Virus record (IMG/VR): IMGVR_UViG_3300031857_000002
Span: 124,001-188,000 of that record
DNA: 64,000 bases
Reading direction: 5' to 3' (one strand)
The position numbers and the translations under genes were made by a program. The notes under the pieces are model-generated. The model saw only the letters and a program-made list of their open reading frames with translations. It did no database searches and was not told the origin of the DNA. Position 1 is the stretch's first letter, and every line of letters begins with the position of its first letter. Positions 12,784 to 23,156 of the stretch are shown here, piece by piece.

Positions 12784-13962
12784 ATGCTTAAATCTAAAAC
12801 TTCTTGTGTGATGCCTTACATGGGTCTAGCAATTCAAAATGACGGAGACTTTTGTGCTTGTAATAGAAACAATTGGAGTTATACCAATCGACAACAAGAA
12901 GTTTTGTTTGCCAATAAAAACACACTAGAAGAAGCATGGGCAAGCCCCACTAGAAAAATGTTGGCTGCTGGATTGGATTATGGAAAATCAATACCAAGTT
13001 GCAGTCCATGCACTAACTTAGAAGCCAGTGGCAAAATCAGTGCAAGACAAACGTTCAATAACCAATTTGGTCATCTTGCTCCGTTGCCTACTCAACCACG
13101 TGTGTTGATCATGAAACCAGGCAATGTTTGTAATCTGTCCTGTAGGATGTGCAATCCAGCAACCAGCACCACATGGTATCAGGATGGGTATAAATTAGCA
13201 AAGGCACATGACAATTTTGTTGGCACTCAAAAAGAATACACTGCACAATTTGAAACTATACGTTCGGCATTCAATCAAGAAAATCCCATATGGGATACCA
13301 TGGAACAGTGGCTGCCCAGTTTGGAATTTTTTGACATCTACGGAGGAGAACCATTCCTAGCTCCTGGTTTGTTTAAAGCCCTAACAGCAGTGGCCAAAGC
13401 AGACAAAAGTTCAACAGTGAGCTTGCAATTGCATACCAATGGTACGATATGGAATCCTGATTACTTGAATACATTGTCCAAGTACAAACACGTAAGAATA
13501 GGCATCAGCATTGACAGTGATGTAACCAGTCAGCTTGAGTACATTCGTTATCCACTGGAAGCTGACGTTGTTTGGCAAAATCTCAGCAGGTACAAAGACT
13601 GGGCAAGCAATCATTCCAACATAGAACTTTATATTTGTGTTACCCTTACGCCTCTTAATATATTTTACTTTGATTCAATTGACAAAAATTTAAGCAGGCA
13701 TTCATTACCAGTTGGCCACAATATTGTTTATAGCCCAACCGAATACGATGTGCGACACATACCAGTATCAGTGAGAAAAATTATTGCTGAGAAATTAAAA
13801 CATTATCCCACCCTGGCAAACTTTTTAATGCAGACCATACCAGGATGCGATGTTGCTTGGCCTAAGTTTTGGAAAATTACAAAAGAATTAGACAACATAC
13901 GCAATCAATCATTTGAATCAACGTTTCCTGAGTTTTATGAATTGATCAAGATGTATGTATGA
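12784..13962 (+). CDS. radical SAM protein with N-terminal SPASM/twitch-like Cys motif
   Basis: CNLSCRMC, GGEP, HTNGT, SID; preceded by TAAATA. Confidence 0.85.
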   Translation: MLKSKTSCVMPYMGLAIQNDGDFCACNRNNWSYTNRQQEVLFANKNTLEEAWASPTRKMLAAGLDYGKSIPSCSPCTNLEASGKISARQTFNNQFGHLAPLPTQPRVLIMKPGNVCNLSCRMCNPATSTTWYQDGYKLAKAHDNFVGTQKEYTAQFETIRSAFNQENPIWDTMEQWLPSLEFFDIYGGEPFLAPGLFKALTAVAKADKSSTVSLQLHTNGTIWNPDYLNTLSKYKHVRIGISIDSDVTSQLEYIRYPLEADVVWQNLSRYKDWASNHSNIELYICVTLTPLNIFYFDSIDKNLSRHSLPVGHNIVYSPTEYDVRHIPVSVRKIIAEKLKHYPTLANFLMQTIPGCDVAWPKFWKITKELDNIRNQSFESTFPEFYELIKMYV

Positions 13963-14130: not shown

Positions 14131-14601
14131 TTAGGCAGCTCGAAGACTTTTAAATCTATCTGCCGCGTATGATGCCGCAAATGCTTCAGGCTTCACAAAT
14201 GGTACTACATTGCATACACCTTTGATGTAGCCAATAGCCTGGCTAATAACACAGCTTGAGCCGTACATTTCGTCAGGGTTGATGTCCAAATGAACTTCAA
14301 CATTGCGTCCTTCAAGTACTTCTGCTAATTTTAAATACAGCTCAGCTACTTTGTAGACTTCGGTCATCAGACGCATGGCAGGCTTGGATTCTTTTTGGTC
14401 GTACACACGTTCACGGTGCACCTCGCCAAATAGTTTACAGCCGTTGTTGCCATTGATGTGTACTACAACCGCTAACACATAGTCCGCATGCCACACACCG
14501 TCAATTCTGATTCTTTCACTGTCACACCCGAGATAAATTTTGGTCTCTGGAGTCTGATCCTTGATAAATTTTGATACCTCTGCCAGATTTAGTTTTTTCA
14601 T
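14131..14601 (-). CDS. RNase H-like YkuK-family protein
   Basis: IYLGCDS, RLMTEV, EVHLDIN, KPEAFAASYAAD. Confidence 0.75.
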   Translation of the reverse strand: MKKLNLAEVSKFIKDQTPETKIYLGCDSERIRIDGVWHADYVLAVVVHINGNNGCKLFGEVHRERVYDQKESKPAMRLMTEVYKVAELYLKLAEVLEGRNVEVHLDINPDEMYGSSCVISQAIGYIKGVCNVVPFVKPEAFAASYAADRFKSLRAA

Positions 14602-16961: not shown

Positions 16962-17010
16962 GTGTTGATACTTATAATAGTGTAACATGTACACTATAAA
17001 TAGTCAATCT

Positions 17011-18171
17011 ATGAACTTCCCAACCAACTACTGTGCATTGCCGTTTAGAGGCATGCAACTCGAATGTGATGGTGAGATTAAATCTTGCTGTCTGTACAAA
17101 CCACATCTTGATCAATCAATTACTCAATATCATATGACCAATTATGATCACTGGTGGAACAAATCTCTTGACCGAATACAAAATCATGTGATCAACAACA
17201 CCGTTGATCCTGGCTGCTCTTATTGTCTAGAGCCAACTATTCTTCCGCATCCTATGCGAACAGGCGCCAATGACTTTTTCAAACATGATCCACAATACAC
17301 ACCAGGTGACTCGCCTGAGTGGTTGGACATACGATTTGGCAACTTCTGCAATCTCAAATGTATGATGTGTACTCCTCTAAATAGTAGTCAAATTGAACTG
17401 GAATACAAAAACAATACCGCAGCCTACAATGCACAAGGAATTGCACACAGCAGTGGATGGAAACGATTCAGCATCGAAGACCAAGCGGCCAGCAAAGAAA
17501 ACTGGTGGGACAATTCTGAAACGTTTGCCAAGGTAGTCCAAATAGTAAATCGTGCTAGATATGTGAACTTCTCAGGAGGTGAACCTCTAATGATGCCACA
17601 ATTGTATGATCTCATGGATGCTATGAATCCCAACTGCATCATTACATTCAATACCAACTTGACCAGACTCACTGATCGCACTATGCAAGCATTGAAAAAA
17701 TTTAAAGATGTTAACTTGCAAGTCAGTTTAGACGGTGTTGGCGCACATCAAGAGTGGATACGTTGGAACAGCAACTGGCCTGAACTTGATCGCAACATTC
17801 AAACAGTTTGTAACACACCTAACATTAGAGTTACATTTAGTTATTTGTTACAACACACCACAATCTACACATGGCCAGCACTTTGGAAATATCTTGAACC
17901 ATTGAACTGTCAAATACTTGCAATGCCAGTGTACGCAGACACTATTGGCAAAGGTGTGTTAACACAACATTCGGCTGTGTCTACGGATGTTGAACGGTTT
18001 GTAGATTGGATCAAAGCCAACCCCAGTTCATGCAATCAAGAAATTGAACACTGGATTAGCAGTTATCAATTTGATCCTGTACTACACAAACAGTTTAGGG
18101 ACTATGTTGGTATGCTTGACAACATACGTGGTGGCAATTTCCGTGCCACGTTTGATCCTGCTTGGGACTAA
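17011..18171 (+). CDS. radical SAM protein with N-terminal SPASM/twitch-like Cys motif
   Basis: CALPF..DGEIKSCC; CNLKCMMC; SGGEP; TATAAATA just upstream. Confidence 0.85.
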   Translation: MNFPTNYCALPFRGMQLECDGEIKSCCLYKPHLDQSITQYHMTNYDHWWNKSLDRIQNHVINNTVDPGCSYCLEPTILPHPMRTGANDFFKHDPQYTPGDSPEWLDIRFGNFCNLKCMMCTPLNSSQIELEYKNNTAAYNAQGIAHSSGWKRFSIEDQAASKENWWDNSETFAKVVQIVNRARYVNFSGGEPLMMPQLYDLMDAMNPNCIITFNTNLTRLTDRTMQALKKFKDVNLQVSLDGVGAHQEWIRWNSNWPELDRNIQTVCNTPNIRVTFSYLLQHTTIYTWPALWKYLEPLNCQILAMPVYADTIGKGVLTQHSAVSTDVERFVDWIKANPSSCNQEIEHWISSYQFDPVLHKQFRDYVGMLDNIRGGNFRATFDPAWD

Positions 18172-19470: not shown

Positions 19471-19545
19471 TGGTGGACCGTCCCGGGATCGAACCGGGGA
19501 CTGAAGCTTGCAAAGCTACTGTGTTCCCATCTATACCAACAGCCC
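19471..19545 (-). tRNA. tRNA-Ala(TGC)
   Basis: G3:U70 pair, encoded CCA. Confidence 0.92.
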
Positions 19546-19550
19546 ATGTG

Positions 19551-19624
19551 TGGCGTACCTCCAAGGACTCGAACCTTGACTGACGGTTTTGGAGACCGCG
19601 GTGCTGCCATTACACCAGAGATAC
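19551..19624 (-). tRNA. tRNA-Trp(CCA)
   Basis: Loop CT-CCA-AA, encoded CCA end. Confidence 0.9.
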
Positions 19625-19794
19625 CTAACACACTCTTTGGAATGTGTGTATTAAAGCACTCTAAAATACTTAGGCTGCCTGTTCTTAAAGAATGCTTTAA
19701 TACGCTGTAATTTTTTGTTCTACAAGAAGAACTCTATCCTACAGGCCGCCCATTTGCAGTTTTGAGTGATGCAGGCTCTCGTTGCCATTGCACT

Positions 19795-19829
19795 AAAAGA
19801 AAAACCCTAGAGTGTTTAGTTCCAGGGTC
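19795..19829 (-). terminator. intrinsic terminator of the putative attenuator
   Basis: Stem GACCCUGGA / UCUAGGGUU followed by UUUCUUUU. Confidence 0.8.
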
Positions 19830-19853
19830 CTTTGGGTAGAATACTAATGTACT

Positions 19854-19970
19854 TTACACGGACCCCGGGTCTCCTGGAATGCTATTCACGCGACCGTTCG
19901 CATGCGTCCAGGCCGATGGCTGGATAAACATGGATGTCTTTGACAGTGAATAGAATTTTGTTTTCATCAT
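19854..19970 (-). CDS. putative 38-aa attenuator leader peptide MMKTKFYSLSKTSMFIQPSAWTHANGRVNSIPGDPGSV
   Basis: ATG lies 6 nt after the -10 hexamer (leaderless); last codons form the antiterminator arm. Confidence 0.7.
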   Translation of the reverse strand: MMKTKFYSLSKTSMFIQPSAWTHANGRVNSIPGDPGSV

Positions 19971-19976
19971 GTACCT

Positions 19977-20005
19977 ATTATAGTTTATTTATGGTTGACA
20001 GTCAA
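19977..20005 (-). promoter_or_regulatory. sigma70 promoter of the leader/tRNA operon
   Basis: TTGACT-N17-TATAAT; palindrome GGTTGAC-N-GTCAACC overlaps the -35. Confidence 0.8.
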
Positions 20006-20042
20006 CCTGTTTTTGAACTTTTATTTATCAAGTTCACCAAAT

Positions 20043-20118
20043 TGGTTGCGGGAGGAGGAATCGAACCTTCCATCTGTGAGCTTATGAGACTCACGTGCGA
20101 CCACTACACTTTCCCGCG
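20043..20118 (-). tRNA. initiator tRNA-fMet(CAT)
   Basis: C1:A72 mismatch, 5' CGCGGG, ends AACCA. Confidence 0.85.
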
Positions 20119-20137
20119 GTAATACTTATACAAAAAT

Positions 20138-20215
20138 TGGAACACAGGGTGAGATTTGAACTCACGACTTTACGGATTTGCAATCCGTTGCATTTGACCG
20201 CTCTGCCACCTGTGC
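20138..20215 (-). tRNA. tRNA-Cys(GCA)
   Basis: U73 + CCA. Confidence 0.9.
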
Positions 20216-20218
20216 ATA

Positions 20219-20376
20219 TTTTTATAGTCAAGCACCGAGAGATGCCGATTTGTCAACAAAGTAGCTAGCTCTGACAAGCGAATGGCAGTTATGTCAGGAC
20301 CTGTTCCTCGCACAGTTAGGCCCGAATAGTGACAGCGTCCCGTCACGATACCTTTATCGATGCTTGACTATAAAAA
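20219..20376 (-). ncRNA. unassigned structured RNA, copy 2 (paralog of 16159..16330)
   Basis: Perfect 16-bp terminal inverted repeat TTTTTATAGTCAAGCA; internal hairpins; shared motifs with copy 1. Confidence 0.7.
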
Positions 20377-20459
20377 CATATTGAAACACACTAACTACCT
20401 TGGTATGTACTCAAGTTCATTGAACCGCTACGACCCTATCTTTAATGTGCTTCAATATG
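20377..20459 (-). ncRNA. unassigned stem-capped RNA
   Basis: Terminal stem CATATTGAAGCACA / TGTGTTTCAATATG. Confidence 0.5.
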
Positions 20460-20658
20460 CTCTGCATCCCCCGGCGGTAATTGTAGTACAGAAAGATACG
20501 ACGCTATCGTACCCATCACACGTACCTTCCACCCGCTTCCCGACAGGGACCGTTCTCGCATTGCTAGCGGCCTTTAGGTTCGAAGACTACCACCCGTAGT
20601 TGTCACACTACTTCTCATCCTGTGGGTCACAGTATCCAGAGACTAATCTGGAACGTTC
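20460..20658 (-). ncRNA. unassigned GC-rich structured RNA directly 3' of tRNA-Tyr
   Basis: No credible ORF; hairpins such as TCCAGA/TCTGGA, CTGTG/CACAG, GTAGT/ACTAC, TACGA/TCGTA. Confidence 0.55.
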
Positions 20659-20743
20659 TGGTGGAGATGATAGGGATCGAACCTATCGTGACCGAAGTCG
20701 GAGGAGTTACAGTCCCCTGCCACACCATTGCGGCGGCATCTCC
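20659..20743 (-). tRNA. tRNA-Tyr(GTA)
   Basis: Long variable arm, encoded CCA. Confidence 0.9.
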
Positions 20744-20748
20744 ATGTG

Positions 20749-20823
20749 TGGTACTCGATAGCGGAGTCGAACCGCTCTTGCCTGGATGAAAACCAGATGT
20801 CCTAACCGATAGACGAATCGAGC
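20749..20823 (-). tRNA. tRNA-Glu(TTC)
   Basis: Cloverleaf, encoded CCA. Confidence 0.9.
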
Positions 20824-20831
20824 AAATAAGG

Positions 20832-20896
20832 GAGAGCCACGGTTGCAGGACCTAGTGCTTCGTTACCGAAGGAAGTGTCCAGGCGATGTGACTCTC
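20832..20896 (-). ncRNA. unassigned 65-nt structured RNA
   Basis: Stems GAGAGTCAC/GTGGCTCTC, CCTGG/CTAGG and CTTCG-GTAA-CGAAG (GNRA loop). Confidence 0.55.
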
Positions 20897-20902
20897 AAAA
20901 CT

Positions 20903-20977
20903 TGGCGGTCTGTGGGGGAATCGAACCCCCGTAAGTGGATAGACAATCCACAGTAATAACCTCTATACGAACAGACC
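20903..20977 (-). tRNA. tRNA-Asp(GTC)
   Basis: Cloverleaf, G73 + CCA. Confidence 0.9.
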
Positions 20978-20985
20978 AAAATCTA

Positions 20986-21200
20986 CTATATTAAAAAATA
21001 CTAAAGGAACCATTGTGCATCTATGTCTACCTATAGGACCGTCTCCTATAGACCTGCACGGTCATTACTGCCTACATGCTCCGCCGCTTTTCTGGACATT
21101 TCTGCCCGGTTTCATAGACCTAGCTTGAGCGTGGGCGGCCCCACTGTCCTCGCCTTAGATCCCTAACGGTGTAGGTAACCTTTAATACATTTTAATATAG
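20986..21200 (-). ncRNA. unassigned ~215-nt structured RNA, first element after the tandem promoters
   Basis: ~20-bp AU-rich terminal stem (CTATATTAAAA...TAAAGG / CCTTTA...TTTTAATATAG) enclosing a GC-rich multi-hairpin core. Confidence 0.6.
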
Positions 21201-21233
21201 CAACCCTTGCGGGCTACTACAAGCAAACTTAAC

Positions 21234-21266
21234 TTTTTAAAGAACATCTAGTTAATTTCTAACTAG
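21234..21266 (-). promoter_or_regulatory. boxB-like hairpin plus boxA antitermination signal
   Basis: CTAGTTA-GAAAT-TAACTAG hairpin followed by TGTTCTTTAAAAA (rrn boxA: TGCTCTTTAACA). Confidence 0.65.
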
Positions 21267-21271
21267 TCTCT

Positions 21272-21300
21272 AGTATAACACAATAGCTATATCTAGTCAA
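21272..21300 (-). promoter_or_regulatory. tRNA/ncRNA operon promoter P2
   Basis: TTGACT-N17-TATACT. Confidence 0.75.
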
Positions 21301-21368
21301 CTTGTTTTTGCAAGTCCCTTCATTTTGGAAGGATTCTGCTAAGAACACTTGTTTCTTAACTTGTTTCT

Positions 21369-21397
21369 ATTGTAGCAAATTGCAAATATTGCGTCAA
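21369..21397 (-). promoter_or_regulatory. tRNA/ncRNA operon promoter P1
   Basis: TTGACG-N17-TACAAT. Confidence 0.7.
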
Positions 21398-21405
21398 CCA
21401 CCAAT

Positions 21406-21431
21406 AAAAAACCCGCTTAGTGCGGGTTTTT
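21406..21431. terminator. intrinsic terminator
   Basis: AAAAAACCCGC-TTAGT-GCGGGTTTTT. Confidence 0.85.
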
Positions 21432-21457
21432 ATAAATGTAATACTTTTGTTTACATT

Positions 21458-22357
21458 TTATGCAACGAACGGAGTATACTCAATTCCTGTTGTTGCTAAC
21501 CCTACTAATCCAATTGTGGTTTCAAACGCTGCCAACTCACTTGCGGCTACTAACACATCTGCTTGGCTCAAATTGCTACTGGTCATCCAAGCTGTGTAGT
21601 CAGTGACTTGTGTCAATGTAGCATCTGTACCAAATACGTTTTTGTAAACGTGCTTGATGAATGTTTCATTGCTGACACCACCTGCATCAGTTTTGTAAGC
21701 ATCGGTGGCCAACAATGCTGTGGCTAGTTCTTTGTTTGTCCACCCTGCATCGGCAAGATAGATACCAATGCCTTTGTATGCGTTGGTTACGTCTGTGGTA
21801 CCCAATGCGGCTGCCAACAATGCGTAAACATCACCAGCACGACCTGCGGCATCATAGGCAATGGCCTTGTCTGTGAATACCACACGCTCGTGGTCAGCAA
21901 GATTGAATTCCATGTTGCTGACCAATGTGCTGGCTAAGGTAACTTTAGCGGCAGTTTTGGTTGTGGTGAATTCTGTGCTGGCACCACCCATGGTGTAGGT
22001 GTCAACGCCTGTGGTGCCTGTAACATCCACAACGACATCAACTGTGCCATCACCTGCACGACCTGTGCCCACTACACCAAAGGTGGCAACTTTACCTAGT
22101 GTGCCAACAGTAGCCACTGTAACGATCAAGTTGTTGGCTACTGTACCACCCAATGCTGTTCCAGCAAGAGTGATAGTGTCTCCTGCCACATAGCCGCGAC
22201 CTGCACTTGCGGCAAGACTATCTAATACAACGGAATAAACACCGTTGGTCTTTGTAACATCAAATGCGGCTTCAACACCTGCACCGCCCGTTAACCCTGT
22301 AACGTTTTGGTATGTGGCATTGACTGCTTTGTCTTTGATTGTGATTGTTGTTGTCAT
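21458..22357 (-). CDS. Thr/Ala/Gly-rich S-layer-like protein with C-terminal DUF4214-like domain
   Basis: ERVVFTDKAIAYD, VSNETFIKHVYKNVFG; strongly biased composition. Confidence 0.65.
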   Translation of the reverse strand: MTTTITIKDKAVNATYQNVTGLTGGAGVEAAFDVTKTNGVYSVVLDSLAASAGRGYVAGDTITLAGTALGGTVANNLIVTVATVGTLGKVATFGVVGTGRAGDGTVDVVVDVTGTTGVDTYTMGGASTEFTTTKTAAKVTLASTLVSNMEFNLADHERVVFTDKAIAYDAAGRAGDVYALLAAALGTTDVTNAYKGIGIYLADAGWTNKELATALLATDAYKTDAGGVSNETFIKHVYKNVFGTDATLTQVTDYTAWMTSSNLSQADVLVAASELAAFETTIGLVGLATTGIEYTPFVA

Positions 22358-22485
22358 AATTTTCCTTTAAAATAAAAATGATCTATAAACTTAATTAGTG
22401 GTTTATACTAGTAGTATACATGAATTTTCTAACAAAACTTGTGCGTGTGCGCACATGATTGGTACGAAAGTTTGAAATTATTGCC

Positions 22486-22512
22486 AAAAGAAAACCCGCC
22501 GGAGCGGGTTTT
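22486..22512. terminator. intrinsic terminator ending the tmRNA coding piece
   Basis: AAAACCCGC-CGGA-GCGGGTTTT. Confidence 0.85.
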
Positions 22513-22694
22513 GGTGGTTTCTGTTACGAGGTATTTCCTACCCTAGGCTGCGTTTAGGCTGCCAAAGCGAACTGTTCGTCGTTTGCATTTACGGTTTTTG
22601 TGTCTTCGACCAGGTTACCCCAATCCTAACGGCTTCTACCTTGCCGGACTGTCCATGTTGTTACTCTTGACCCAATCGATCCTGTGTCAGGCCC
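22495..22694 (-). ncRNA. ssrA: two-piece (permuted) tmRNA, coding piece; tag ANDEQFALAA* at 22554..22586
   Basis: 5' GGGCCTG acceptor strand, GGATCGA D-region, GTAAAT-GCA resume context, typical proteolysis tag. Confidence 0.9.
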
Positions 22695-22695
22695 A

Positions 22696-22905
22696 TCATA
22701 ACGATTTTCGTCCCCAATTAATAATGTTCCATACTCTTTCATGAATATAATACAATATTGTATTCACTATTAATTGTGTTATAGCAATAGGTCCTGCAAT
22801 TGATAAGTTACCTGAAATTAACAAGACTATGAGGAATGTTGCACCCGATCCTGTTAATCTCCAACTTATAGTTTTTACAATGCTTCTCAAATTGCTATCG
22901 TTCAT
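22696..22905 (-). CDS. DUF2061-like small membrane protein inside the tmRNA intervening segment
   Basis: RSIVKTISWR...YYIHERVW..I.WG; AAGGA RBS immediately after the tmRNA CCA. Confidence 0.8.
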   Translation of the reverse strand: MNDSNLRSIVKTISWRLTGSGATFLIVLLISGNLSIAGPIAITQLIVNTILYYIHERVWNIINWGRKSL

Positions 22906-22914
22906 AAATCCTTA

Positions 22915-22978
22915 TGGTGGACCTGGCGGGCACTGCCCCCGCGTCTTGAATCCTTTTCTCTCTACTTCATACAGTCTT
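22915..22978 (-). ncRNA. ssrA: two-piece tmRNA, acceptor piece
   Basis: T-arm GCGGG-GGCAGTG-CCCGC; CAGGTCC-A-CCA pairs with GGGCCTG giving G3:U70. Confidence 0.88.
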
Positions 22979-23156
22979 AAACTTGCTCCACTATCTGAAT
23001 ATCCAGTCTTAACGGCTGATCCCAGTTGACCCAGGGTATGGTGCCGGCTTCTCTGGCACTCTCAATATCATCCAATATTTCGGTGACATTGTAGCCAGGC
23101 CCAGGAATGTCTCGTTCCTGCCATAGTTGATTTTGCATTGAGATAGTGATTTTCAT
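22977..23156 (-). CDS. 59-aa hypothetical protein (MKITISMQNQLWQERD...), not in the ORF track
   Basis: Translated by hand; TAAATA upstream. Confidence 0.5.
   Translation of the reverse strand: MKITISMQNQLWQERDIPGPGYNVTEILDDIESAREAGTIPWVNWDQPLRLDIQIVEQV

What the first reader, a model, noticed from the sequence alone, without database searches (positions are those of the whole stretch)
20377..21200. Cluster of further non-tRNA structured RNAs packed between tRNAs at the 5' end of the operon
Seen in sequence: four more ORF-free elements abut tRNA ends. They are 20986-21200 (AU-rich ~20-bp clamp around a GC-rich core), 20832-20896 (nested stems, GUAA tetraloop, also contains AGGUCCUG), 20460-20658 (multi-hairpin) and 20377-20459 (14-bp clamp). 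They lie first behind the tandem promoters. Inference: they are abundant small RNAs released by tRNA processing, possibly antidefence decoys or translation modulators.
Basis: partly seen in the sequence, partly recalled or inferred. Interest (0 to 1): 0.68.

Follow-up and report, generated by a model that had tools for sequence, protein, structure and literature searches.

The report
Structured RNAs inside a phage tRNA operon
A 320-kb uncultured freshwater jumbo phage carries at least three conserved, previously uncatalogued folded RNAs plus one variable hairpin wedged between the tRNA genes of an operon laid out like a bacterial ribosomal-RNA operon; what these RNAs do is unknown.

Summary
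All four elements lie on the tRNA (minus) strand at the stated coordinates.

- **A (21202-20984), B (20896-20832), C (20658-20460):** real structured RNA families. They recur in dozens to more than 100 IMG/VR contigs. Compensatory base-pair changes occur in 25/77 (A), 11/18 (B) and 24/47 (C) pairs, far above shuffled and slid controls. Every copy lies on the tRNA strand. No Rfam family matches.
- **D (20459-20377):** a hairpin at a variable site. Relatives have a 7-9-nt mini-palindrome or other fillers there.
- **Neighbour E (20376-20216):** a fifth family of the same kind.

New context: A follows a conserved promoter, a hairpin and an exact match to the rrn boxA consensus. A 23-bp terminal helix encloses A. 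This is the layout of a 16S rRNA leader.

Most likely these are small RNAs co-transcribed with the tRNAs and cut out by host RNase P, RNase E and probably RNase III. The terminal helices would stabilise them. Processing, abundance and any role in trans are not shown. The antidefence or translation roles remain guesses. The shared AGGUCCUG word is chance.

Closest analogues are T4 rnaC/rnaD and the GOLLD/ROOL RNAs. I rate this a new variant of a known kind.

The parts
21369..21397 (-). Upstream promoter-like site P1 (TTGACG, 17 nt, TACAAT with TG)
   Evidence: Consensus scan, 10 of 12 matches. Its -10 block (TGCTACAAT) is conserved in many relatives. Function not tested.
21272..21300 (-). Promoter P2 (TTGACT, 17 nt, TGnTATACT extended -10)
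   Evidence: Consensus scan, 10 of 12 matches. A matching promoter lies at the same aligned place in 30 of 35 distinct A-bearing relatives.
21248..21266 (-). Leader hairpin (7-bp stem, GAAAU loop) just before boxA, in the position of boxB
   Evidence: Read from the sequence. Conserved in the alignment of leaders. The predicted start of P2 transcripts falls at its 5' edge, so it may be complete only in P1 transcripts (inference).
21235..21245 (-). boxA-like element GUUCUUUAAAA
   Evidence: The only exact match in the window to the published boxA consensus GYTCTTTAANA of PMC5725501. Chance alone gives 0.36 per window. The support is position plus conservation: 25 of 35 distinct leaders match exactly and 10 of 35 have one mismatch.
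21203..21214 (-). Small GC hairpin between boxA and the A clamp
   Evidence: Fold. Its sequence differs but its pairing is kept in divergent relatives.
20984..21202 (-). Element A: about 219-nt structured RNA, 23-24-bp AU-rich terminal helix around a multi-branch core
   Evidence: z = -4.3. In 10 distinct homologues 25 of 77 pairs have compensatory changes. 96% of cells are paired against 87% in shuffles and 34-46% when slid. Divergent members were found by nhmmer in most B-bearing loci and in 59 further loci. It is usually first in the tRNA array.
20903..20977 (-). tRNA-Asp(GTC), with its CCA end encoded
   Evidence: ARAGORN and Rfam.
20832..20896 (-). Element B: 65-nt rod-like hairpin with three conserved internal loops
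   Evidence: z = -3.75. 34 distinct copies, with 11 of 18 pairs compensatory. The covariance model scores 79-100 bits in 47 loci and gives one copy in the window. 13 further variants with an altered core include GAGC/GCUC in place of GGAU/GUCC in the inner helix. It occurs next to different tRNAs and directly fused to C.
20659..20823 (-). tRNA-Glu(TTC) and tRNA-Tyr(GTA)
20460..20658 (-). Element C: 199-nt structured RNA. Three 5' hairpins, then a multi-branch domain closed by a 7-bp helix, then an invariant 13-nt 3' tail
   Evidence: 22 distinct homologues, with 24 of 47 pairs compensatory. 98% of cells are paired against 89% in shuffles. The tail pattern occurs in at least 119 IMG/VR stretches, and all 82 new ones are true C by nhmmer. 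Summed contig depth over C (up to 569 in run X1 and 276 in X2) is among the highest in the region, matching or exceeding tRNA-Glu.
20377..20459 (-). Element D: 83-nt hairpin with an 18-bp stem, filling a variable site between C and E
   Evidence: z = -5.9. 15 loci carry it at 95-99% identity and one at 82%. It shows no double compensatory change, only G-U to A-U or G-C switches that fit the minus strand. The same site is a 7-9-nt mini-palindrome in L023, L054 and L131. In L029 it has the same arms with another core, and in L133 a different hairpin. Contigs that skip it occur in RNA-library assemblies.
20216..20376 (-). Element E (just outside the finding): 161-nt structured RNA with a 20-bp terminal helix
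   Evidence: z = -6.2. 14 distinct homologues down to 72% identity, with 12 of 40 pairs compensatory. The clamp sequence is nearly invariant.

Best explanation
The stretch is the 5' part of a long untranslated phage tRNA operon that is organised like a bacterial rRNA operon.

Behind one or two sigma-70-type promoters come a hairpin and a boxA element. On nascent rRNA, boxA recruits the host NusB/NusE antitermination complex. Here it would let RNA polymerase run through kilobases of untranslated, hairpin-rich RNA without Rho-dependent termination.

The first product is A, a structured RNA of about 219 nt enclosed by a 23-bp leader-trailer helix, in the way 16S rRNA is enclosed in its precursor. 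Further independent RNA modules sit between the tRNAs with almost no spacer: B, C, the variable hairpin D, and E.

I infer that they are cut out as by-products of tRNA maturation:
- RNase P, cutting at the 5' end of the next tRNA, makes their 3' ends.
- RNase E, or trimming behind the encoded CCA of the previous tRNA, makes their 5' ends.
- Host RNase III probably cuts the 18-24-bp AU-rich terminal helices of A, D and E.
- Paired termini would then make the products stable.

What is shown: A, B, C and E are conserved structured RNA families that function on the tRNA strand and behave as shuffled, self-contained modules. The conserved promoter and boxA leader are also shown.

What is inferred: antitermination, the processing route, stability, and action in trans. 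The invariant unpaired nucleotides of A, B and C argue for binding a protein or RNA partner. That partner and the biological role are unknown.
For: - **Structure:** compensatory changes in A 25/77, B 11/18, C 24/47 and E 12/40 pairs. In my own control script no shuffle out of 300 reached the observed values, and slid partners gave only 31-50% pairing.
- **Strand:** all hits lie on the tRNA strand (A 46, B 65, C 54, D 16, E 40; none opposite). G-U pairs in the stems fit only this strand.
- **Modularity:** the same modules occur with different tRNA neighbours, or fused to each other, in different phages.
- **Leader:** a conserved promoter, hairpin and boxA precede A. The boxA consensus is from PMC5725501. 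The rrn layout of boxB-boxA-boxC followed by a 25-40-bp leader-trailer helix cut by RNase III is from PMC10250234.
- **Clamps:** the three longest inverted repeats of the tRNA region are the clamps of E, A and D.
- **Host enzymes:** the phage encodes no RNase III of its own, so a host enzyme would be used.
- **Expression hint:** contigs from four metatranscriptome studies cover the region. In run X2 depth is 100-275 over the tRNAs and C but 0-1 over the protein gene just upstream.
- **Precedent:** T4 rnaD and rnaC abut tRNA-Arg and each other in the same way and are stable RNAs of unknown function (PMC9697503).
Against: - No RNA ends, sizes or abundances could be read, because only assembled contigs were available. 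One RNA-library contig in X1 runs from tRNA-Asp through both promoters, so DNA carry-over or read-through is present there.
- The boxA match alone is not significant within one window (0.36 expected). Its support is position and conservation, and the host and its own boxA are unknown.
- RNase III cleavage of the clamps is pure inference.
- D has no covariation and is replaceable. It may be no more than a spacer hairpin.
- C alone does not fold better than shuffled sequence.
- No partner protein was identified.
Confidence: 0.6

Rival explanations
1. The elements act only in cis. They would be structured spacers that insulate neighbouring tRNAs from misfolding, give entry sites to RNase III or RNase E, and are degraded after processing. 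They would have no life of their own.
For: They abut tRNAs. D is replaceable by a mini-palindrome or other hairpins. Many other inter-tRNA gaps in relatives are single hairpins that fill the whole gap. In rRNA precursors the leader-trailer helices are discarded processing and folding aids (PMC10250234).
Against: A, B and C keep long invariant unpaired stretches and complex multi-branch cores across sequences down to about 75% identity. A mere spacer would not need this. Each module keeps its identity when moved next to other tRNAs, fused to another module, or placed behind non-tRNA sequence. Most tRNA pairs in the same operon are separated by only 4-12 nt and need no such spacer.
Confidence: 0.22
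2. They are small mobile or recombinogenic DNA palindromes (MITE-like elements) that have colonised the tRNA array. The terminal inverted repeats would serve at the DNA level.
For: Terminal inverted repeats of 18-23 nt. Presence or absence of D at a precise site, and the same arms with another core in L029. Module order is shuffled between phages.
Against: Each element is single-copy in the 320-kb genome. There is no target-site duplication at the D site. All 221 hits are in one orientation relative to the tRNAs. Stems contain G-U pairs that would be A-C mismatches on the other strand. Internal helices covary. No transposase lies nearby: the two opposite-strand ORFs in the array are radical SAM proteins.
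Confidence: 0.05
3. They are decayed or unusual tRNA or tmRNA genes. In particular, C would be part of a second permuted tmRNA-like gene that uses the T-arm and acceptor strand of tRNA-Tyr.
For: There is a weak Rfam match of tRNA-Tyr plus C to the permuted tmRNA model (19.5-23 bits, E = 0.03). In it a GGGGAUG near the 3' end of C pairs with the acceptor 3' strand of tRNA-Tyr. The phage has a true permuted tmRNA 2 kb upstream. T4 rnaC carries a tRNA T-arm.
Against: The score comes almost entirely from the T-arm and CCA end of tRNA-Tyr itself. In other phages C follows other tRNAs, B, or non-tRNA sequence while its tail stays invariant, so the pairing is not maintained. No element matches the tRNA model even at E up to 10, and none has a T-arm. 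C shows no similarity to the real tmRNA.
Confidence: 0.03
4. They encode small peptides.
For: Short ORFs of 30-79 codons overlap A, C and D on one or the other strand.
Against: Indels of 2, 4, 18 and 20 nt occur within the families, and substitutions follow base pairs rather than codon positions. The longer ORFs lie on the strand opposite to the tRNAs.
Confidence: 0.02

Closest known systems
Phage T4 small stable RNAs rnaC (species 1) and rnaD (species 2) in the T4 tRNA cluster
   Same: They are non-tRNA RNAs encoded on the tRNA strand inside a phage tRNA cluster. They abut a tRNA and each other: tRNA-Arg, then rnaD after 1 nt, then rnaC after 6 nt. Their function is still unknown (PMC9697503).
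   Different: No similarity of sequence or structure was seen. No direct alignment was run; Rfam gives the elements no tRNA-like match. rnaC carries a tRNA-like T-arm and acceptor-like stem, and the elements here have none. The T4 RNAs lie at the 3' end of the cluster, whereas A lies at the 5' end behind a boxA leader. The long 18-24-bp terminal helices are not seen in the T4 folds.
GOLLD and ROOL large ornate RNAs of phages and prophages
   Same: They are structured non-coding RNAs of unknown function encoded in phages, often near tRNA islands. GOLLD sometimes has tRNAs inside its linker and was first found in lake metagenomes (PMC12286853).
   Different: No match to the Rfam GOLLD or ROOL models. 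The elements here are much smaller (65-220 nt against about 580-800 nt) and are separate modules. Oligomer or cage formation is untested.
Bacterial rRNA operon leader: tandem promoters, boxB-boxA-boxC, and an RNase III leader-trailer helix around 16S rRNA
   Same: One or two promoters, a hairpin, and an exact match to the boxA consensus are followed by a 23-bp helix formed by the two flanks of a structured RNA. tRNAs lie downstream in the same untranslated transcript (PMC5725501, PMC10250234).
   Different: The enclosed RNA is about 170 nt and shows no rRNA similarity. There is no recognisable boxC. The spacing from boxA to the helix is about 32 nt, against 18-19 nt in Enterobacteriaceae. Binding of Nus factors and RNase III cleavage are untested.
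E. coli RtT RNA from the tyrT operon
   Same: From my own knowledge, not tested here: it is a small RNA released by processing of the transcript downstream of tRNA-Tyr genes. C mostly follows tRNA-Tyr.
   Different: No match to the Rfam RtT model in the E-value scan. C also follows other tRNAs or B.

Membership tests
tRNA (Rfam RF00005) | Cloverleaf with T-arm, D-arm and anticodon arm that scores above the family threshold | tested here: not met
   ARAGORN and cmscan call only the flanking tRNAs. No tRNA match falls inside A, B, C or D even at E up to 10.
Permuted (two-piece) tmRNA (Rfam RF04321) | Acceptor piece with T-arm and CCA, acceptor stem closure, and a tag reading frame with pseudoknots; score of at least 47 bits | tested here: not met
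   tRNA-Tyr plus C scores 19.5-23 bits, nearly all from tRNA-Tyr. The closure is not kept in relatives. The true tmRNA lies at 22554-22976 and scores 104 bits.
Any Rfam 15 family (riboswitches, self-cleaving ribozymes, 6S, SRP, RNase P, Y RNA-like, GOLLD, ROOL, RtT and others) | Covariance-model match at or near the gathering score | tested here: not met
   Nothing at gathering score across the 64-kb window except tRNAs and tmRNA. Nothing credible at E up to 10 in 19500-21500.
Stable RNAs embedded in phage tRNA clusters (T4 rnaC/rnaD type; a kind, not a homology family) | Encoded within the tRNA cluster on the tRNA strand, abutting tRNAs | tested here: met
   and for T4.
Stable RNAs embedded in phage tRNA clusters (T4 rnaC/rnaD type) | Accumulate as discrete stable species released by tRNA-processing nucleases | not testable with these tools
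   Only assembled contigs of RNA libraries were available, so no ends or levels can be read.
rrn-type antitermination leader | boxA sequence matching the consensus, promoter-proximal in an untranslated operon | tested here: met
   GUUCUUUAAAA at 21245-21235 matches GYTCTTTAANA. It lies 26 nt downstream of the -10 element of P2. 25 of 35 relatives match exactly and 10 of 35 have one mismatch.
rrn-type antitermination leader | Binding of NusB/NusE and resistance to Rho-dependent termination | not testable with these tools
   Needs biochemistry or genetics. The host is unknown.
Leader-trailer (RNase III) processing helix | Long helix (about 20 bp or more) formed by the two flanks of the enclosed RNA, kept by covariation | tested here: met
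   The A clamp has 23-24 bp, and 8 of its pairs show double changes. The E clamp has 20 bp and D has 18 bp.
Leader-trailer (RNase III) processing helix | Cleavage by RNase III | not testable with these tools
   No raw reads were available. The phage has no RNase III gene, so a host enzyme would be needed.
Y RNA / YrlA with Ro (Rsr) | A Ro/TROVE protein (often with RtcB) encoded alongside, and a match to the YrlA model | tested here: not met
   No TROVE or RtcB in the 320-kb genome. No Rfam match.
Retron msr/msd | An adjacent reverse transcriptase | tested here: not met
   No RVT_1 match in the genome.
MITE-like mobile palindromic element | Multiple copies, both orientations, target-site duplication | tested here: not met
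   Single-copy, one orientation only, no duplication at the D site.

The most novel reading that the evidence does not exclude
The phage has copied the logic of a host rRNA operon to build small pseudo-rRNA particles. In this reading:
- boxA recruits the host rRNA antitermination and chaperone complex.
- That complex folds the leader-trailer-clamped RNAs A, C and E, and the rod-like B.
- These RNAs then assemble with host ribosomal or translation proteins, or with each other as GOLLD and ROOL do.
- The result retunes or protects translation during infection.
- The modules behave as exchangeable cassettes whose terminal helices double as recombination joints between phages.
Probability: 0.12. 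Interest if true: 0.85.

Novelty: new variant of a known kind. Interest (0 to 1): 0.62.

Why it matters
Non-tRNA RNAs inside phage tRNA clusters have been known since T4's species 1 and 2 RNAs. Their function is still unknown after fifty years.

This case offers several well-supported, uncatalogued RNA families (A, B, C, E). They have large natural alignments, clear secondary structures, invariant loops that point to partners, and natural variants in which modules are present, absent or swapped. That makes the old question more testable.

The boxA leader and the leader-trailer helix suggest that a phage tRNA operon borrows the host's rRNA antitermination and folding machinery. I know of no report of this for a phage tRNA operon. 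That statement rests on my own knowledge and four literature searches, not on an exhaustive review.

If the RNAs turn out to bind ribosomal or defence components, they would be a new class of phage takeover tools. If not, they are at least new RNA families for Rfam.

Tried and rejected
1. **Shared AGGUCCUG word as a common motif of B and E.** The B covariance model finds only B in the window, and the word is not kept in the E family. Chance.
2. **B as an antisense regulator.** B has a 16-of-17 complementarity to a small DUF2061 ORF inside the tmRNA gene. The target is absent from other B-bearing loci that include the tmRNA region. Chance.
3. **C as a tmRNA-like gene closed by the acceptor strand of tRNA-Tyr**. 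The upstream neighbour varies while the C tail is invariant. Rejected.
4. **C hairpin loop complementary to the T-loop of tRNA-Tyr** (inverted repeat I8). Those loop letters vary in the family. Chance.
5. **Y RNA, retron, or phage RNase III partners.** No TROVE, RtcB, RNase III or reverse transcriptase in the genome.
6. **GenBank phages.** Only the tRNAs match; no homologue of the elements was found.
7. **A 17-nt C pattern in 596 Gb of prokaryote genomes.** It gave about 120 chance hits. Only one (L186, a contig of a Haliscomenobacter MAG) is a true A plus C locus. The pattern was too short, and this spent the single genome scan.
8. **Supplement of the IMG/VR structured-RNA catalogue (PMC10690425).** It is not held, so I could not check whether these families are among its 10,006 candidates.
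9. **Second copies in the genome.** None.
10. **Expression.** Only contigs could be laid on the region, so there are no ends, strand or level.
11. **A covariance model for A.** Not attempted because of its length; nhmmer was used instead.
12. **Complex prediction.** No job was sent, as no protein partner is proposed.
Full report
**Where this is.** The window is bases 124001-188000 of a 320-kb linear IMG/VR virus record that CheckV estimates to be 92% complete. Its DNA polymerase is about 50% identical to those of Sinorhizobium phage Phosso and Agrobacterium phage Atu_ph07. It is therefore an uncultured jumbo phage with no close sequenced isolate. The window holds 26 tRNA genes and a permuted tmRNA, all on the minus strand. 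The finding covers the first kilobase of the main tRNA array. Read on the RNA strand the order is: promoters, A (21202-20984), tRNA-Asp, B (20896-20832), tRNA-Glu, tRNA-Tyr, C (20658-20460), D (20459-20377), E (20376-20216, just outside the finding), tRNA-Cys, tRNA-Met.

**The observation.**
- A has a 23-24-bp AU-rich helix between its two ends and a GC-richer branched core (z = -4.3 against dinucleotide shuffles).
- B is a nested hairpin with a GUAA loop (z = -3.75).
- D is a hairpin with 18 contiguous pairs, not 14 (z = -5.9).
- C alone folds no better than shuffles (z = 0.03).
- The neighbouring E has a 20-bp terminal helix (z = -6.2).

The three longest inverted repeats of the whole 13-kb tRNA region are the clamps of E, A and D. 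No Rfam family matches any element, even at E up to 10.

**Relatives.** GenBank phages share only the tRNAs. IMG/VR holds many relatives:
- 80 loci were fetched through the DUF4214 protein just upstream of the operon.
- 56 were fetched through an exact B-core pattern.
- More than 119 each were fetched through a C-tail pattern and a loose A pattern. All 82 new C-pattern loci are true C by nhmmer. Only 34 of 92 new A-pattern loci are true A.
- Most of these contigs come from lake and other freshwater samples. Metatranscriptomes labelled freshwater, lake, marine and sediment also hold parts of the region.

**Are they structured RNAs?**
- A: ten distinct sequences, down to 76% identity, keep 77 predicted pairs. 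25 pairs show changes on both sides. Much more divergent members keep the clamp, the long-range helices and the conserved single strands UUACC, AUGAA and GUAAUGA.
- B: 34 distinct sequences, with 11 of 18 pairs compensatory. That core was fixed by my search pattern. However, 13 further variants found with a profile show the inner helix changing from GGAU/GUCC to GAGC/GCUC.
- C: 22 distinct sequences, with 24 of 47 pairs compensatory.
- E: 14 distinct sequences down to 72% identity, with 12 of 40 pairs compensatory.

In my own control the observed fraction of paired cells was 96-99%. None of 300 column shuffles reached it or the count of compensatory pairs. Sliding the 3' partners by 1-3 columns dropped pairing to 31-50%. 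These controls do not remove phylogenetic signal, but the margin is large.

Every copy lies on the tRNA strand (221 hits, none opposite). The stems contain G-U pairs that would be mismatches on the other strand. Indels of 2, 4, 18 and 20 nt exclude coding. Each element is single-copy in the genome.

**D is different.** It is nearly identical in 15 loci, with one variant at 82%, and shows only one-sided changes. The site between the invariant 3' tail of C and the 5' arm of E has several states:
- a 7-9-nt mini-palindrome (CAT, a few T, then G) in L023, L054 and L131;
- the same arms with another core in L029;
- an unrelated 91-nt hairpin in L133.

Contigs that skip D also occur in RNA-library assemblies. 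D is best described as one filler of a variable hairpin site, not a conserved RNA family like the others.

**Modules.** The families behave as self-contained units whose order and tRNA neighbours differ between phages. Examples: 'A asp B glu tyr C D E cys', 'A ser B glu tyr C E asp', 'A leu leu B glu asp tyr E asp', 'glu B C E'. B can be fused directly to C. C follows tRNA-Tyr most often, but also other tRNAs, B, or non-tRNA sequence. B, C, D and E usually abut a tRNA or another module within 12 nt on both sides.

**The leader.** A is nearly always first in the array, after kilobases of protein genes or after a gap of 170-500 nt. Aligning 170 nt upstream of A in 35 distinct loci shows these features in order:
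- a conserved promoter, TTGACn, about 17 nt, TGnTATACT (window 21300-21272; 30 of 35 loci);
- a hairpin (21266-21248);
- a conserved single strand, AUGUUCUUUAA(A/C)AAG;
- a small GC hairpin that covaries;
- the A clamp.

The single strand contains GUUCUUUAAAA (21245-21235). This is an exact match to the boxA consensus GYTCTTTAANA derived for gamma-proteobacterial rRNA operons and suhB (PMC5725501). One window would give 0.36 such matches by chance, so the match alone proves little. But it lies 26 nt behind the -10 element, and 25 of 35 distinct leaders match exactly while the other 10 have one mismatch.

A second promoter-like site lies about 97 nt further upstream (21397-21369). Its -10 block is also conserved. 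An intrinsic-terminator-like hairpin at about 21400-21432 follows the upstream gene (read from the sequence).

In bacterial rRNA operons the elements boxB, boxA and boxC follow promoter P2. boxA is necessary and sufficient to recruit the antitermination complex. The rRNAs are bracketed by 25-40-bp leader-trailer helices that RNase III cuts (PMC10250234). The phage operon reproduces this layout, with A in the place of 16S rRNA.

**How it most likely works.**
- Shown: conserved structured RNAs on the tRNA strand; a conserved promoter and boxA leader; terminal helices; modular shuffling.
- Inferred from established knowledge of rRNA and tRNA maturation:
  - boxA recruits host NusB/NusE and protects the long untranslated transcript from Rho.
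  - RNase P, cutting at the 5' end of each downstream tRNA, sets the 3' ends of the modules.
  - RNase E, or trimming behind the encoded CCA, sets their 5' ends. B, for example, begins CCA|AGUUUU.
  - Host RNase III cuts the 18-24-bp AU-rich clamps. The phage has no RNase III of its own.
  - Paired ends make the products stable.
- Pointing to a partner: the long invariant unpaired stretches of A, B and C argue for a specific partner and against a pure spacer role. No partner was found. The genome has no Ro/TROVE, RtcB or reverse transcriptase.

**Expression.** Thirteen RNA-library runs from 12 of the 13 studies that hold the stretch carry parts of it. Four were laid on it. All are assembled contigs, so ends, strand and level cannot be read. 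Contigs cover A, B, C, D and E. In run X2 summed depth is 100-275 over the tRNAs and C, but 0-1 over the protein gene just upstream, as expected for RNA rather than DNA. In run X1 one contig runs from tRNA-Asp through both promoters, so DNA carry-over or read-through is present there. This is a hint, not proof.

**Comparison with what is known.** The closest kind is the pair of T4 stable RNAs. In the T4 record tRNA-Arg, rnaD and rnaC follow each other with 1 and 6 nt between them. They are still 'RNAs of yet unknown functions' (PMC9697503). They differ in that rnaC has a tRNA T-arm, which the present elements lack. GOLLD and ROOL are larger phage RNAs found near tRNA islands, also of unknown function, that form RNA-only cages (PMC12286853). 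Their Rfam models do not match here. I found no report of an rRNA-type boxA leader and leader-trailer helix on a phage tRNA operon. That rests on my own knowledge and four literature searches.

**Verdict.** I rate it a new variant of a known kind, with interest 0.62. Confidence that A, B and C are functional structured RNAs is about 0.9. Confidence in the full processing and antitermination model is about 0.6.

Noticed in passing
window 22696-22905 (minus), inside the tmRNA gene at 22463-23007: A 69-codon ORF of the DUF2061 membrane-protein family (E = 3.5e-20) sits in the intervening loop of the permuted tmRNA gene. That loop lies between the CCA end of the acceptor piece and the 5' end of the coding piece. 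Relatives have shorter tmRNA genes (328-557 nt). A protein gene in the excised loop of a two-piece tmRNA is unusual.
   Followed up: partly
window 20216-20376 (minus): Element E, next to the finding, is a fifth structured RNA with a 20-bp terminal helix. 12 of 40 pairs are compensatory in 14 sequences down to 72% identity. The clamp sequence, which includes TTGACT, is almost invariant even where the core has diverged.
   Followed up: yes
window 19625-20042 (minus): The 418-nt gap between tRNA-Met and tRNA-Trp (F) is conserved in many relatives. It holds a near-consensus promoter (TTGACT, 17 nt, TATAAT; 20005-19977), a 15-bp hairpin (19648-19703) and two one-mismatch boxA-like words (19693, 19659). 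It may start a second transcription unit of the same kind.
   Followed up: partly
window 12784-13962 and 16987-18171 (plus strand): Two radical SAM proteins of about 393 residues (one also with a SPASM domain) are encoded on the strand opposite to the tRNAs, inside the tRNA array. An RNase H-like protein (PF04308) is at 14131-14601 on the minus strand.
   Followed up: partly
L186 5164-5938 (NZ_JBBAKG010000090.1, 23-kb contig of a Haliscomenobacter sp. MAG): This is the only true hit in the prokaryote genome collection. It carries both A and C. It is either a phage contig binned with the MAG or a hint at the host. A two-piece tmRNA would be unexpected for a Bacteroidota host.
   Followed up: no
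L021 14799-14881 and 19500-19637; L056 8073-8234; L023 12171-12379; L076 11077-11118: Other inter-tRNA gaps in related phages are filled from end to end by unrelated hairpins with 14-18-bp terminal stems. The clamped-module habit is therefore general in this phage group and goes beyond families A to E.
   Followed up: partly
window 20903-20977 and relatives: The phage tRNA genes that precede B and C encode their CCA ends (for example ...GACCGCCA). Their 3' maturation would therefore need trimming, not CCA addition.
   Followed up: no
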